Of a stretch of 64,000 bases of DNA, positions 47,528-64,000 are shown piece by piece. The stretch comes from Lama guanicoe (taxonomy: Eukaryota), in assembly GCA_013239625.1 (NCBI GenBank), contig MU056216.1, forward strand, positions 12,930,729 through 12,994,728. Reading direction: 5' to 3'. A model generated the notes under the pieces. That model had not been told where the DNA came from. It did no database searches and saw only the letters and a list, made by a program, of their open reading frames with translations. A program made the translations under genes and the position numbers. Positions within the stretch are counted from its first letter, which is position 1. Every line of letters begins with the position of its first letter.

Positions 47528-48022
<495 letters not shown>

Positions 48023-55604: not shown

Positions 55605-55742
55605 TACACGTACGAGCAGAACTTGCTTCCCCGAACACAACCAGGACTGTGGCAGGCACACAGTAGAAGCTGACGCGGTGGTCCGCAGAAGCGGGATGAA
55701 GTGGGAACGTGGGCACCCAGAGCTCCGCCCTTGGTCTTGCAG

Positions 55743-55885
55743 GATGGGAAGGACTACATCCCACTCAACGCCATACTGACAGGAACCAGCGGGTTCACGT
55801 ACTCAACTCCTGCCTTCTCTGAGGACTTCTTCAAGGAAGATATTTCTGCTCCAAAGTTTAATTCAGGAAGTTCTGATAATGTAAG
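55743..55885 (+). CDS. FLT1: FLT1 exon 27 (contains Y1169 equivalent): DGKDYIPLNAILTGTSGFTYSTPAFSEDFFKEDISAPKFNSGSSDNV(R)
   Basis: tcttgcag|GATGG ... GTAAG|gtaaga; 143 nt. Confidence 0.97.
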
Positions 55886-57762
55886 GTAAGATTTCTTTCT
55901 TTCTCCAAATTCATTTAATAAAATTTTAAACGTATTAAAAAAGCCCACCTCCTAAGCCCAACCAGAGCATCCTGCCTGTCCTATCTCTCCCCTCCGAACA
56001 CGCGTGTTTTCCTTTTTGCTGAACCATTAGAAAGAGGACAGCGGGCCCTGTGACACTTCCCTCTGAACACTGGTCCACCTCTGGGAAGGCTGCTCTCCCT
56101 TCCCAGACACCACAGAAATGGATGATTCCTTCATATTAAATTTTCAAATTTCCATTATTTTCCCCAAATGTCTTTTATACTTTTTAAAAAGCACCCTCCA
56201 ATCGAGAATAACACACTACATTCCCTCTGGTTTCTCTAGTCTGTCTTATTCTAGATGAACTGCTCCACCTTTCTTCCCCCAATGACCTTGACTTTTTTCA
56301 TACCTTCCATAAAAGGAAACAAACTGGATTTTTCCCTCTTACCTGACAAACTAACGTCTCTCTCATTCCTGAAGAGGAGACTGAGGAAGGGGTGAGATAC
56401 TGGGGGCGGGGAAAGGGAGAAAGATGCACTGAGCACATCCGCAGCGCGGGGGATCCACACTCCAGTGCCAGCGGTTACCATGTGTCCCCCACTCCCAGGG
56501 CCAGCGGCTGCAGACACGTGCTGGGTGTGGCCTGGCGCTGTGCTAGGCTCTCTGCAGACTCCACCTTCATGCTCAGAACAGTGCTATGCGGACATCCAGA
56601 TATCCTTCCTGTCATACAAACAGCAACATCAAAGCTCCACAGCTTGCCAAAATTGTGTGGCTAGAAAGCGGCAGAAATAGGATTCCTAACCCAGGCATCT
56701 GACATGCCCTCCCTGTCCCCTGCAGTCAGGACTCTCTCTAGGACTTTTAGACTATCCTGTGAGCCTTCTAGCATCTTTATATGCAGTAGGTATAGTCCCA
56801 GGGCTCTGACCTCAGTCCGGCCAACCTTGCCAGGCGACCAGGCAAGGCGAGGGAAGAGCCGCAATGTCTGAGAGGACTGAGCCTGTCACAGGCCTGGAGC
56901 AAGCCCTGGGCCAGCCGACATTTGTGAATGGCTTACAGGTGAGCGGCCCTGTTTATACTTCACAACCAGCCCAAGAGGCTGAAAGAGATGAGTCCATCTT
57001 TTGAAGATGAGAAAACTAGCTTGCATTAAGTCCATTAGCAAAGTCGGACTGGGTCAGACCTCGGGAGGAGGCGTCAGAGCTACGTGGGCCCGTCCGGCCT
57101 GCCACTTAGCCTAACAGGGTGCCTGTCTGGGAAGTGGGACCTCGTCTACGGCGACGGGGCATCAGCCGAGTGAGCATACAGTGATGTCCCTGCTGGTCCC
57201 TCCTAGTACATGGTCCACAAAAGCTCAGTGGGCAGTTACAGGGAAATCATGTAAACACCGCCCCGTCCCCCAGTCTGTAATCAGAGAACAGGGTGTGCAG
57301 GCCTGGCCCCAGTCCCCAATTATGCCACCGAACTGGCTGTGTGGCCTGATGGGTCCTGGCCTTTCACGGTAACAGCTGCTCTGATGAAGCCGTGTCCCCG
57401 CTCTGGGCATCACTTCTCCCCTTTGGGATGTGGGTGTTTAGACCAGATGACGACTCAGGTGTCTTCTTGGCCTGACACCTGATTCTTCGAGGGACCAGAG
57501 GCCCGACCGCTACTGAATCTCTGAAGGGTTCCCCTGGGGTTTTGCTCAAAACCATGCCATGTGGATTAGCAGCCATGGGAGGAAGTAGCATCACCTCAGG
57601 ATTCCTAGGAGGGCACAGCCAGAGACTCACAGCCTCCCAGGGAGCGAGGCGAGACCTCCTGGTGTTCTGGCTCCTTGTAGCAGGGCTGCGGTGCCCACGG
57701 TCTCCCGACTAACCAAAGCCGGAGGCACTTCCCTGTCCTGACTACTCTTTCTGCTTCTTTAG

Positions 57763-57847
57763 ATATGTAAATGCTTTCAATTTAATCAGCCTGGAAAGAA
57801 TCAAAACCTTCGAAGAACTTTCACCAAATGCCACCTCCATGCTTGAT
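57763..57847 (+). CDS. FLT1: FLT1 exon 28 (Y1213 equivalent): YVNAFNLISLERIKTFEELSPNATSMLD
   Basis: ttctttag|ATATG ... GAT|gtaagt; 85 nt. Confidence 0.97.
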
Positions 57848-59502
57848 GTAAGTAATGGAATTAACCCACCAGTGCCCGCCTGGCAGGACCCTTGGCCAGA
57901 CCCCATCCAAACACAAACCCCAGTGGTCTGGTGGCTCTCAGTCCACGGGGGCCAGTAATCAGCGGTGGCTGAAATGACAATTTCGGGGGACTGACAACAA
58001 GACTTAGCTATACAGAACTAATTAGAAAGTAATTCTAGTTTGAAGATGACCCAGAATTCACTCCAGGGCCTGAGTCCTTGCCTGGTCATAGTCTAGTCCC
58101 TCCGTGGTGGGTTCTCAGCTTCTGGGCTCTCAGTGACGGAACCCTGCTTTCAGAGTAACAGAGGGACCCAAAGCTGTGTGAGTAGCCGGGCCTTCACAAC
58201 AAAGCAGAGAGCCCTCTCCTACGAGCAGCTTCAGGATCCTGCAAGAAGCCTGCCTGGGCCTTCTGCTCCCTCCCGCTGAGGTTCCAGAGGCTGAACAGCC
58301 ATGTTCCCACCCAGCCACACAGGGAGTAGCAGCCCAGACGGCCTGGCAAATGGGAAGCTAGACCCGCCTGTCCCTTAAAGATCTGGCACACGGGGAGGAG
58401 AGGGAGGCCTGGGCCCGAGTGTGACCTCCAGACACCCTGCTGCTGAGGGAGCTAGAAATGCTGACCTCAGGGCCACCCCTGTGTACCAAGCTGGCTCTGC
58501 ACCGTCACAAGATCTCCAGGGGCTGCGTACACGTTACAGTCTGAGAGGCGCCGGGACTGCCCGTGACCCAGAGGGGCCCGGGAGACCAGCTGCGGTGCGA
58601 AGGTTATGACTGTGAGCGGTGTGGCCTTGAGGCCCAGCACAGCCACCACTGGAAACACCCAGCCCTCTCAGACACCAGATATAAAAAGACTTAAACATTA
58701 AAAACACTGTTAATAAGCTGGAGAATACAGAAGCAAGGTAGCTGGAAATTCTGCTTTGCTGCTCAGGATACTGGTTTTGGGTTTTCAGTCCAAGGAAACG
58801 ATACTGAGCAAAACATGGAAGATTTCTTTGAACCTTAACCCTCGGCTCCTTGACACAGAGGGAACTCGAGCAGCCCCTTCGCTGAGACCCCTTTCCTGGT
58901 AGTCAAGGACGTGCACACAGCCCTGCTGGAGACGGGAGGGGTGGCAGAGCACGTGAGGTCCGCTTACTGGAAATGCCTGATTAACCGGGTAGGAAGGAGT
59001 CTGTGTAAAACTCGATGCTAAATGTGAATCAGTGAGGAAGTAAAATTGCTGGAAACTGTGACCGAGGAGGGCCTAAAAATTCTATAGAATCTTCAAGAAA
59101 GAAACTTAAACCATGTCTTTAATCGTGTCTCAGAACCTTCACATATCATAGCCAATGGTCATCTGCCAAATTAGCTTTAATATACTTATGCAGTAATTTT
59201 CATGAAAGTTTACTAAGAAGAATGCTCACCTGTCGCCTGCAGTTTTCCATTCTGTTTACATTTACTTTGTTCACCTTCAGGAAGAAGGGCCTCAGGGTCA
59301 CTGGGAATAGGGGTTCCTGCAGTGGACAGTTTAGACTAGCCAATACGGAGAGAATGCTTTGTCTTCACAGGCAGGGATTGCAAGAGGTGAGGGCAGAGCC
59401 TGGAGTGACTGCACATGTGCATCCCAGCATCACGCCCCTCCACTTGGCAAGGACCCCTCCGGGTCAAGCAGTTGGTGTAACCTTGTCCTTCTTCCCCGCC
59501 AG

Positions 59503-59597
59503 GACTACCAGGTGGACAGTGGCAGTCTGCTGGCATCCCCCTTGCTGAAGCGCTTCACCTGGGCTGAGAGCAAACCCAAGGCTGCGCTGAAGATCAA
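59503..59597 (+). CDS. FLT1: FLT1 exon 29 (Y1242 equivalent): DYQVDSGSLLASPLLKRFTWAESKPKAALKI(N)
   Basis: cccgccag|GACTA ... ATCAA|gtaagg; 95 nt. Confidence 0.97.
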
Positions 59598-60251
59598 GTA
59601 AGGGTACTGGGTGCCTCTTCTAGGGTCACTTCCCAGAGCGGGCGGGGCTGGGGTGAGAAGGAAGATGCTGGGGGTGGGCTGGTTAATTGTGATATTTGAG
59701 GCCTACTTGCTCCCCTGAACTAGTGTCCAGGCACTGCAGAAAGCACTCTTCCCCCTGAAGGACAGGAAAGAAGGCAGAAAAATCAGGTACATGAGTGCAA
59801 CGCTCTGGAAAGACTGCGATTTCAGAGAAAAACAGAAAATTCCAGCAGACAGGCAGCCCACGCATAGCCCCTTAGTTGAAAGGAGCCAGACCCACTCAAC
59901 TGTGAACAGCGCATGATTCGGACAGAAGCGTGCTTCTAGGGGCGGGGAGAATCTGCACCTGGTACCGTGCCCGGGGCCGCGGTGGAGCCAGTCCCGAGAC
60001 AGGCCATCCACAGAGCCCGACCTTTCCAGGTGAAGGCTCATTCCCTTGCGGTCCTGGCCCTCCTTCCTCCACACCTGACCCCTGACACTGCTGTCCGAAT
60101 TCCCCACGGCCCTGCTCCTCTCTGCTCGTCTCTGCCCAGGGACAGGGCTGGACAGGGTGAGGTCGGCCTGTCAGCCATGCCTTCCTCTCCTGGTCCAAAT
60201 GCCAGCCCCTGTCTCACCCACAGGCAGAGCCGGCTCCTCTTTTATCTACAT

Positions 60252-62210: not shown

Positions 62211-62521
62211 GCAGCTCACTGACCCGAGAGGAAGGGAGGGCTGGACCCAAGCCTGGGAGTCCTTTCCCACCAGGAATTCTGGGTTTGCAGTAACTAACCA
62301 CACGCTCCGCCCCCTGCCAGTGGACCGACTCTTTCTGCCAATGACACGAGCTGGGGGGAGAGAGGCCGTGTGCAGCTGCAGAGAATCTGAGTGGAGGTCG
62401 GGCTGGGATTCAGTGGCCATTACTTGCGGGGCAGTTACGAACAAGTGACCCACCACTTCAGTGTTTGTTTTCTAGAAACCAATTTTGTTCAATTGACTTT
62501 TGTTTCCTTTACTTTTTTTAG

Positions 62522-62723
62522 CTTGAGAGTAACCAGTAAAAGCAAGGAGTCCGGGCTTTCTGACCTCCCCAGACCCACATTCTGCCATTCCAGCTGTGGG
62601 CACATCAGCACCGGTCAGCGCAGGTTCACCTACGACCACTCGGAGCTGGAGAAGGCCATCTCCTGCTGCTCCCCTCCCCCCGACTACAACTCGGTGGTCC
62701 TGTGTCCCACCCCGCCCGTCTAA
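62522..62723 (+). CDS. FLT1: FLT1 exon 30 coding part: LRVTSKSKESGLSDLPRPTFCHSSCGHISTGQRRFTYDHSELEKAISCCSPPPDYNSVVLCPTPPV*
   Basis: long pyrimidine tract then ttttttag|CTTGA; stop TAA 62721-62723. Confidence 0.98.
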
Positions 62724-62755
62724 AGCCTGACGCACAGCCTGACGCACAGCCTGAC
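62724..62755 (+). repeat. 12-bp tandem repeat x2.7 (agcctgacgcac) directly after the stop codon
   Basis: agcctgacgcac agcctgacgcac agcctgac. Confidence 0.95.
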
Positions 62756-64000
62756 TTCTAGAGCCACATGTGTACTTATAGCCCCCCAAAACTAGCTTTT
62801 GCCAGTATTATACATATATAAATGTACACCGCCCTCTCCCCCCCGGGAGCAGCTGCTTGTTCTGATTTGTAACAGTGCTTTTTTCTCTTTTAACTAACAA
62901 GAATGTAACCCCAGACACGCAAAGGGCACCACGGCTAATCCTCACTTCACTCGGTGCGTAAGAGCCGTCCTCTCTGAGCCCAGCGACTGACCTCTGCTCC
63001 CGGACCTCAGCAGGGCCCGGAGGGCTCGGGAGACATGCTGGTCACCAGCAGCGCGGGCTCCACGCCAGCTGCTGCGGCCCCAGTCCTGGTCCTCCAGCAG
63101 CCGAGGCACGTAGGAGGGGAGGGAAAAAGGGAGCGAGGAAGAAGAGGAGAGAAAATAGGACAGGCCCCTGAGGAGGAAAGGGAGGGATTTGAGCTGAACC
63201 GCGCGCGGGAGGGAGGAGGGGAGTCCGTGACAAGGCCACCCGGTGGCACGTGAAAGAACCCGGCCAGGGAGCAGACAGGACAGAGGAGTGAGGGGAGTGA
63301 GCAAAGGACAAACATTATTTTTGGAATTACATGGCAAATTTGTAAACGTCAGTGATGGGGACGGGTTCTGTGCACACCACGAAGGCGCACATGGTTTATT
63401 TCTGGCATTTCTGCCCGGCCTCTGGCCTGGCCGCTGGACCCACACCACAAGCCAAGTGTGCCCTGGGCTGACAGCCTCACACCCCGCATACATCCCGAGT
63501 GAGTCTGATCTGTTAGGTTATCTGCTGGGCTTAAAGCCACGCTTTCAACAGTAATGTCAGAGTCTATTTTAAGTATGAATACCTAGTCAAGACACCTTTT
63601 TTTTTTTTGTATTAACCTGTTTCATGCAATTAGTTATAAAAGGACGCTGAGAAGGAAAAAGCAGTCTTGTGGAGGTTTTCTCTAGATCCAAACTAGGAGA
63701 GATGGAATCATTTAGACCCCAGTTAGGATAGATGGAATAAAAGAGAAGTCAGAGTGAAAACCCCATCTCTCCACCAACCAAACCGACTCCCTGAAACAGT
63801 GGGGACCCGAAGGACAGGAAGTCAGCCTGGCCCCCCCTTGTGTAATGGGGGCCTCACTATCTCATGTCATCTCCCAGACAGAAGAGCATTAACCAATGTC
63901 TATGAAGCACTTTATGCTCCTTGAGAAAAAAGGTGGTATGTAATGTATGCAAGATATTTCTAGAATTGGGACTCAGGATATTAGTTAATGAGCCATCAGT
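62724..64000 (+). other. FLT1: FLT1 3'UTR (proximal part, probably continues beyond the window)
   Basis: Follows the stop codon of the last exon; contains CAGTATTA (62803-62810) and GCACTTTA (63907-63914) miRNA seed matches. Confidence 0.9.

What the first reader, a model, noticed from the sequence alone, without database searches (positions are those of the whole stretch)
62685..62723. C-terminal docking tyrosine (human Y1333) is replaced by Cys
Seen: the protein ends DYNSVVL-C-P-TPPV* (TGT 62703-62705, CCC 62706-62708). The human end, from memory, is DYNSVVL-Y-S-TPPI*. Y1169, Y1213, Y1242, Y1309 and Y1327 equivalents are all kept. Known: Y1333 is a VEGFR1 autophosphorylation site reported to recruit c-Cbl/CD2AP for ligand-induced endocytosis and degradation, and its YxxP motif suits Nck/Crk. 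Inference: this receptor may be down-regulated more slowly and act as a longer-lived surface VEGF sink. The adjacent S>P change suggests the motif decayed rather than a single miscall.
Basis: partly seen in the sequence, partly recalled or inferred. Interest (0 to 1): 0.8.

Follow-up and report, generated by a model that had tools for sequence, protein, structure and literature searches.

The report
VEGFR1 tail tyrosine replaced by cysteine
In this camelid-type genome the VEGF receptor FLT1 (VEGFR1) ends ...VVLCPTPPV instead of the nearly universal ...VVLYSTPPV, so one conserved phosphotyrosine docking site is missing; published mutant data suggest the effect on receptor turnover is small.

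Summary
The last coding exon of FLT1 ends DYNSVVL-C-P-TPPV*, with TGT at 62703-05, CCC at 62706-08 and TAA at 62721-23. The equivalents of Y1169, Y1213, Y1242, Y1309 and Y1327 are all tyrosine codons.

The site is strongly conserved. Of 21 comparator tails, 19 have Tyr, including goat, red deer, donkey, two primates, Chinese hamster and two distant sequences of about 50% identity. The exceptions are one whale-style prediction (Asp) and one truncated tail. Human YSTPP fits the published Cbl-TKB motif pY(S/T)XXP. The window loses both the Tyr and the +1 Ser.

The functional inference is weak. Human Y1333F changed neither Flt1 abundance nor c-Cbl co-IP in HEK293 cells. VEGFR1 stability is reported to be governed by palmitoylation. 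Mice lacking the whole kinase domain and tail are healthy.

Verdict: a probably real, lineage-specific loss of one docking motif in an otherwise intact FLT1, of modest interest. This scan has no earlier follow-up of this stretch.

The parts
62522..62720 (+). Coding part of the last FLT1 exon (exon 30 equivalent), 66 codons plus one base that completes a split codon. The acceptor ...ttttttag lies just upstream.
   Evidence: The exon is 71-86% identical to FLT1 C-terminal fragments of goat, donkey, orangutan and others.
62703..62705 (+). TGT = Cys at the human Y1333 position
   Evidence: Tyr is found here in 19 of 21 comparators.
62706..62708 (+). CCC = Pro at the human S1334 position, the +1 residue of the pY motif
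   Evidence: Comparators have Ser in 18 and Ala in 2.
62709..62720 (+). TPPV, the rest of the former pY-S-T-P-P motif. The +3 and +4 prolines are kept.
62721..62723 (+). TAA stop codon
62685..62687 (+). TAC = Tyr, Y1327 equivalent, inside the conserved PPPDY
62631..62633 (+). TAC = Tyr, Y1309 equivalent (RRFTYD)
59500..59597 (+). Exon 29 equivalent (DYQVDSGSLLASPLLKRFTWAESKPKAALKI + AA). The Y1242 codon TAC is at 59506-08 and the GT donor at 59598.
57761..57847 (+). Exon 28 equivalent ((R)YVNAFNLISLERIKTFEELSPNATSMLD). The Y1213 codon TAT is at 57764-66.
55734..55886 (+). Exon 27 equivalent (..QDGKDYIPLNAILTGTSGFTYSTPAFSEDFFKEDISAPKFNSGSSDNV). The Y1169 codon TAC is at 55755-57.
47606..47734 (+). 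Kinase exon with [11 protein letters not shown] and the activation loop [13 protein letters not shown]. The Asn of KNPDY is present.
   Evidence: The exon is 95% identical to FLT1 fragments that carry PF07714.

Best explanation
This is the intact FLT1 (VEGFR1) orthologue of a camelid-type mammal. On its lineage the last phosphotyrosine docking motif of the disordered C-terminal tail, human pY1333-S-T-P-P, has been lost through Tyr>Cys and Ser>Pro. A Cys cannot be tyrosine-phosphorylated. Recruitment that needs pY1333 (NCK and CRK SH2 domains, the c-Cbl TKB domain, and the reported pY1333-STAT3 link) therefore cannot occur at this site. That step is an inference. The ligand-binding decoy function, the weak kinase and the five other docking tyrosines are unchanged. 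The most likely net effect is small: a near-neutral or mildly modulatory change in a moderately fast-evolving tail, not a large change in receptor lifetime.
For: Shown in the sequence: TGT and CCC at 62703-08, and all other tyrosines kept. The kinase exons are 95-100% identical to named FLT1 proteins and the splice sites are intact, so the gene is under constraint and is not a pseudogene. Tyr is conserved in 19 of 21 comparator tails, including two distant ones. The motif fits (NX/R)pY(S/T)XXP, and Y1333 binds NCK and CRK. The change consists of two substitutions, not a homopolymer indel. One run's independently built contigs hold 100% of 158 sampled 31-mers over 62400-64000, and 13 more DNA runs under four organism labels hold 92-99%. 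Evidence that the effect is small: Y1333F was without effect on Flt1 level or Cbl binding; stability is governed by palmitoylation; TK-/- mice are healthy. The tail carries five changes in its last 45 residues that are seen in neither goat nor the closest artiodactyl fragment (I, K, A, C, P), so it is not tightly constrained on this branch.
Against: There is no read-level or second-species confirmation of the codon. The 31-mer shares do not resolve a single codon. The near-invariance of this Tyr from distant vertebrates to primates argues that it is functionally important somewhere, so a 'near-neutral' reading may understate the effect. The Y1333F data come from HEK293 cells, not endothelium or macrophages. 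The earlier study quoted did find Y1333-dependent Cbl/CD2AP endocytosis in other cell types.
Confidence: 0.6

Rival explanations
1. One reading: loss of the Y1333 Cbl/CD2AP site slows ligand-induced endocytosis and degradation, making the membrane receptor a longer-lived VEGF/PlGF sink.
For: Y1333 was reported as the c-Cbl site for ubiquitination and endocytosis of Flt1 (ref. 20 as quoted). YSTPP matches the TKB consensus, and both the pY and the +1 residue are changed. The site is highly conserved.
Against: Y1333F changed neither Flt1 abundance, nor the rise in abundance after c-Cbl knock-down, nor co-IP with c-Cbl. Ligand-induced loss is attributed to depalmitoylation and lysosomal routing. 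mVEGFR1 is already unusually stable and recycles constitutively.
Confidence: 0.15
2. Assembly or consensus error, or a private or heterozygous allele of the sequenced animal; the species normally has Tyr.
For: Only one assembly was seen. The read check could not be run. No other camelid sequence was obtained.
Against: There are two separate base substitutions in 4 bp in a clean, N-free, non-repetitive coding stretch. Run X1's own contigs hold all 158 sampled words. With about 1 word in 10 sampled, at least one should span the codon with about 96% probability (my estimate). Two further samples of the same organism label hold 99%.
Confidence: 0.1
3. Gain rather than loss. The new Cys adds an S-acylation site near the CC pair of the tail, or S>P creates a PTPP (PxxP) core. 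Either would shift the tail from phospho-dependent to constitutive docking or stabilisation.
For: mVEGFR1 is palmitoylated on unmapped cytoplasmic cysteines, and palmitoylation stabilises it. The window's tail reads CPTPPV, with P-x-x-P.
Against: This is pure motif reasoning. No site mapping, predictor or homologue supports it. The Cys is 6 residues from the end of a soluble disordered tail, far from the membrane.
Confidence: 0.05
4. Adaptive tuning of VEGFR1 signalling in a hypoxia-tolerant lineage, through loss of the pY1333-STAT3/angiogenic output, possibly convergent with a whale.
For: pY1333 is linked to VEGFR1-STAT3 signalling in ischaemic muscle. A whale-style predicted protein (P0023) has Asp at this site and Cys at Y1309. 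Another agent's unchecked note calls this genome alpaca/llama-type.
Against: There are two unverified sequences and no selection test. It is unknown whether lowland camels share the change. No paper in the library links FLT1 to camelid adaptation.
Confidence: 0.07

Closest known systems
Human FLT1 / VEGFR1 (C-terminus DYNSVVLYSTPPI, sites Y1327 and Y1333)
   Same: The exon structure at the 3' end is the same. The kinase motifs HRDLAARN and DFG and the activation loop KNPDY are present. The tail tyrosines Y1169, Y1213, Y1242, Y1309 and Y1327 are kept, as are the CC pair and PPPDYNSVVL.
   Different: Y1333>C, S1334>P and I1338>V. Val at the last position is common in non-primates.
Engineered human Flt1 Y1333F (PMC4227870)
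   Same: It removes the same phospho-acceptor.
   Different: Phe keeps the aromatic ring and the +1 Ser, whereas the natural variant has Cys-Pro. Y1333F showed no change in abundance or c-Cbl binding in HEK293 cells.
c-Cbl TKB-binding degron (NX/R)pY(S/T)XXP, as in EGFR, ZAP-70 and Sprouty2
   Same: Human YSTPP fits pY(S/T)XXP, and the window keeps Pro at +4.
   Different: The window lacks the Tyr and the +1 Ser/Thr, so it cannot be a TKB ligand.
P0023 (eukprot bmy_09561T0; the id style of the bowhead-whale gene set, from my own knowledge and unverified)
   Same: It is the only other comparator with a full tail and no Tyr at this site.
   Different: It has Asp rather than Cys, with L>P at -1 and Y1309>C. 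Its quality is unknown.

Membership tests
FLT1 / VEGFR1 orthologue | Split tyrosine-kinase domain exons with HRDLAARN and DFG | tested here: met
   Searches show [42 protein letters not shown] at 47606-47734. The exons are 95-100% identical to fragments carrying PF07714 that are named FLT1 (Cervus, Piliocolobus).
FLT1 / VEGFR1 orthologue | FLT1-specific C-terminal tail | tested here: met
   The last exon hits only FLT1 C-terminal fragments, E 1e-30 to 1e-17, 67-86% identity. No Pfam family covers it.
FLT1 / VEGFR1 orthologue | Activation-loop Asn (KNPDY), cited as defining the decoy character (title of ref. R239) | tested here: met
   [13 protein letters not shown]
FLT1 / VEGFR1 orthologue | Seven-Ig ectodomain that binds VEGF-A, PlGF and VEGF-B | not tested
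   The upstream exons were not examined.
FLT1 / VEGFR1 orthologue | Full set of C-tail autophosphorylation tyrosines (1169, 1213, 1242, 1309, 1327, 1333) | tested here: not met
   Five of the six are present. Position 1333 is Cys. This is a site loss within the orthologue, not grounds to exclude it from the family.
c-Cbl TKB ligand motif (NX/R)pY(S/T)XXP | Phosphorylatable Tyr at position 0 | tested here: not met
   TGT = Cys
c-Cbl TKB ligand motif (NX/R)pY(S/T)XXP | Ser/Thr at +1 | tested here: not met
   CCC = Pro
c-Cbl TKB ligand motif (NX/R)pY(S/T)XXP | Pro at +4 | tested here: met
   C-P-T-P-P
c-Cbl TKB ligand motif (NX/R)pY(S/T)XXP | Actual binding of c-Cbl to the tail | not testable with these tools
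   This needs pull-down or co-IP. The published human data conflict.

The most novel reading that the evidence does not exclude
Loss of the last VEGFR1 docking tyrosine is a fixed, selected change in hypoxia-tolerant cetartiodactyl lineages (Cys in camelids, Asp in a whale). It rewires VEGFR1 tail signalling or turnover, for example the pY1333-STAT3 or Cbl route, and provides a natural knock-out of a site whose role is disputed in cell lines.
Probability: 0.07. Interest if true: 0.6.

Novelty: new variant of a known kind. Interest (0 to 1): 0.3.

Why it matters
The role of Y1333 in VEGFR1 down-regulation is disputed. One study ties it to Cbl/CD2AP, and another finds that Y1333F has no effect. 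A healthy mammalian lineage that naturally lacks the site, and the whole pY(S/T)XXP motif, would argue that it is dispensable in vivo, or would offer a natural variant for testing what it does in endothelium and macrophages. It does not change the basic picture of VEGFR1 as a decoy receptor.

Tried and rejected
1. Read-level check. The look-up of sequencing runs gave 24 coded runs.
- the DNA pattern came from 62682-62723;
- the peptide terms came from 62688 onward;
- searches used hit proteins, with words and scoring restricted to the part homologous to 62553 and beyond;
- alignment A2 starts at 62553;
- the local tblastn left those 40 bases out.

I could make no codon-level comparison (TAY>TGT) and run no dN/dS test.

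3. The metagenome scan for the camelid version of the codon context found 0 hits. I did not run a protein-level metagenome scan, because it would mainly draw human-like host contigs.

4. The representative search returned only C-terminal fragments and one spurious 3950-aa repeat protein (P0005). No full-length FLT1 was returned, and the length window of the word search never reached full-length or camelid proteins.

5. Pfam finds no family for the tail.

6. Literature searches for camel, alpaca or llama together with FLT1 found nothing relevant.

7. I rejected two other readings. It is not a CaaX box, because the Cys is at -6. It is not a PDZ ligand change, because the human tail already binds none of the tested PDZ domains.

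8. I built no joined spliced protein. Exons were handled one by one by reference.

9. I fetched no contig taken for human. I did not look up the contigs of P0010, an unnamed fragment with a primate-type tail.

Full report
**What is there**

Window 62522-62720 (+) is the coding part of the last exon of FLT1 (VEGFR1). It follows a polypyrimidine tract and an AG acceptor. It translates to ...LRVTSKSKESGLSDLPRPTFCHSSCGHISTGQRRFTYDHSELEKAISCCSPPPDYNSVVLCPTPPV*, with TGT at 62703-05, CCC at 62706-08 and TAA at 62721-23.

They show canonical splice sites and the remaining docking tyrosines as Tyr codons:

| Human site | Codon | Window start | Context |
|---|---|---|---|
| Y1169 | TAC | 55755 | DGKDY |
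| Y1213 | TAT | 57764 | (R)YVNAF |
| Y1242 | TAC | 59506 | DDYQ |
| Y1309 | TAC | 62631 | RFTYD |
| Y1327 | TAC | 62685 | PPDYN |

The kinase exon at 47606-47734 reads HRDLAARN...[19 protein letters not shown]. Kinase exons are 95-100% identical to protein fragments named FLT1 that carry PF07714. The gene is therefore an intact, constrained FLT1 orthologue, not a pseudogene.

Yes. One paper prints the VEGFR1 peptide DYNSVVLYSTPPI with tyrosines [1327, 1333]. Another prints the FLT1 (NM_002019.1) C-terminus SVVLYSTPPI.

**How conserved is the site?**

The last-exon peptide was searched in the representative library and three times in the word-indexed collection. Only C-terminal fragments of 65-401 aa were within reach. 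Named sources are:
- Capra hircus
- Cervus elaphus
- Equus asinus
- Pongo abelii
- Piliocolobus tephrosceles
- Cricetulus griseus

The rest were unnamed, including two distant sequences of about 50% identity.

In alignment A2, 19 of 21 comparators have Tyr at the window's Cys. The exceptions are:
- P0023 (eukprot bmy_09561T0). It ends VVPDSTPPV and also has RRFTCD, that is Y1309>C.
- P0006, whose tail is truncated (CCSPPLWEL).

At +1, 18 comparators have Ser and 2 have Ala. The block PPPDYNSVVLYSTPP is close to invariant, and the window carries two adjacent changes in it.

The closest fragment, P0022, is 90.6% identical over the exons. That is an artiodactyl level of identity, not a camelid one. 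No camelid sequence was obtained.

**Is it real and shared?**

I could not test this directly. The look-up of sequencing runs listed 24 coded runs:
- One run holds 100% of the 158 sampled 31-mers of 62400-64000.
- Thirteen further DNA runs, under four organism labels and several studies, hold 92-99%.
- RNA runs hold 21-34%.

With about one word in ten sampled, at least one word should span the codon with a probability of about 96% (my estimate). The 100% run therefore supports TGT CCC, but it may be the source animal.

A metagenome scan for the codon context found nothing.

The change is two substitutions 2 bases apart in clean coding sequence, 12 kb from the nearest N run. That is not a typical consensus error. 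I put about 10% on an error or a private allele.

**What the motif is**

- Y1333 is listed among the VEGFR1 autophosphorylation sites.
- It is described as binding NCK and CRK and as linked to VEGFR1-STAT3 signalling.
- It was reported as the c-Cbl site for ubiquitination and endocytosis (ref. 20 as quoted).
- The c-Cbl TKB domain recognises (NX/R)pY(S/T)XXP (abstract of PMC2943896).
- Human Y-S-T-P-P fits pY(S/T)XXP. The window's C-P-T-P-P lacks both the Tyr and the +1 Ser/Thr.

Any pY1333-dependent docking is therefore lost. This follows from the chemistry and was not measured.

**What it probably does**

It runs into three published results.
- In HEK293 cells, Flt1 Y1333F did not differ from wild type in abundance, in its response to c-Cbl knock-down, or in co-IP with c-Cbl. 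The authors concluded that Y1333 is not needed for stability or for the Cbl interaction, at least in those cells.
- In endothelial cells, mVEGFR1 is already very stable and recycles constitutively. Its stability and ligand-induced lysosomal loss are governed by palmitoylation and depalmitoylation.
- Mice expressing VEGFR1 without the kinase domain are healthy, with near-normal vessels.

The tail is also not tightly constrained on this branch. Five of its last 45 residues differ from both goat and the closest artiodactyl fragment.

My best reading (0.6) is a real, lineage-specific loss of one phospho-docking motif with a small or context-specific effect. The rivals are:

| Rival reading | Confidence |
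|---|---|
| Error or private allele | 0.10 |
| Hypoxia-related adaptive reading | 0.07 |
| Gain of an acylation or PxxP site | 0.05 |

The near-invariance of the Tyr across vertebrates is the main argument that the change is not neutral.

**Novelty and score**

No paper in the library links FLT1 to camelids, and the variant peptide is printed nowhere. It is a new variant of a well-known receptor. It is a useful natural experiment for a disputed site, but no mechanistic surprise.

- No letters of 62512-62551 went to a search tool.
- No N run was filled.
- No contig taken for human was fetched.

Noticed in passing
P0023 (eukprot bmy_09561T0), last 45 residues: This whale-style predicted FLT1 fragment also lacks the Y1333 tyrosine (VVPDSTPPV: L>P, Y>D) and has Cys at the Y1309 position (RRFTCD). 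It may be a second, independent loss in Cetartiodactyla, or it may reflect a low-quality gene model.
   Followed up: partly
window 62724-62755: Immediately after the stop codon, the 3'UTR starts with a 12-base unit AGCCTGACGCAC repeated about 2.7 times.
   Followed up: no
window 59596-59597 with the first base of the last exon: The codon split across the last intron reads AA|C (Asn), where comparators have Asp (LKI-D-LRVTS).
   Followed up: no
window 57761-57847: The exon 28 equivalent reads YVNAFNLISLERIK, where primate-type and most other fragments have FM (KFMSLERIK or NFMSLERIK). The pY1213-V-N core is kept.
   Followed up: no
P0006 (108 aa, unnamed): This primate-like FLT1 tail fragment ends prematurely in CCSPPLWEL and lacks PDYNSVVLYSTPP. 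It may be a frameshifted copy or a pseudogene.
   Followed up: no
P0005 (3950 aa): This is a spurious hit of the representative search: a highly repetitive protein in which 45 weak stretches sum to E 4e-19. It is not related to FLT1.
   Followed up: yes
window 55791-55810 (GFTYSTPAF): A second Y-S-T-P string, the human Y1184 equivalent, is kept in the tail. It has Ala rather than Pro at +4 and is not among the phosphosites listed.
   Followed up: no
window 62673-62687 (PPPDY): The invariant PPPDY just upstream of the lost site has the form of a PPxY (WW-domain ligand) motif and is retained. This is my own motif reasoning and was not tested.
   Followed up: no
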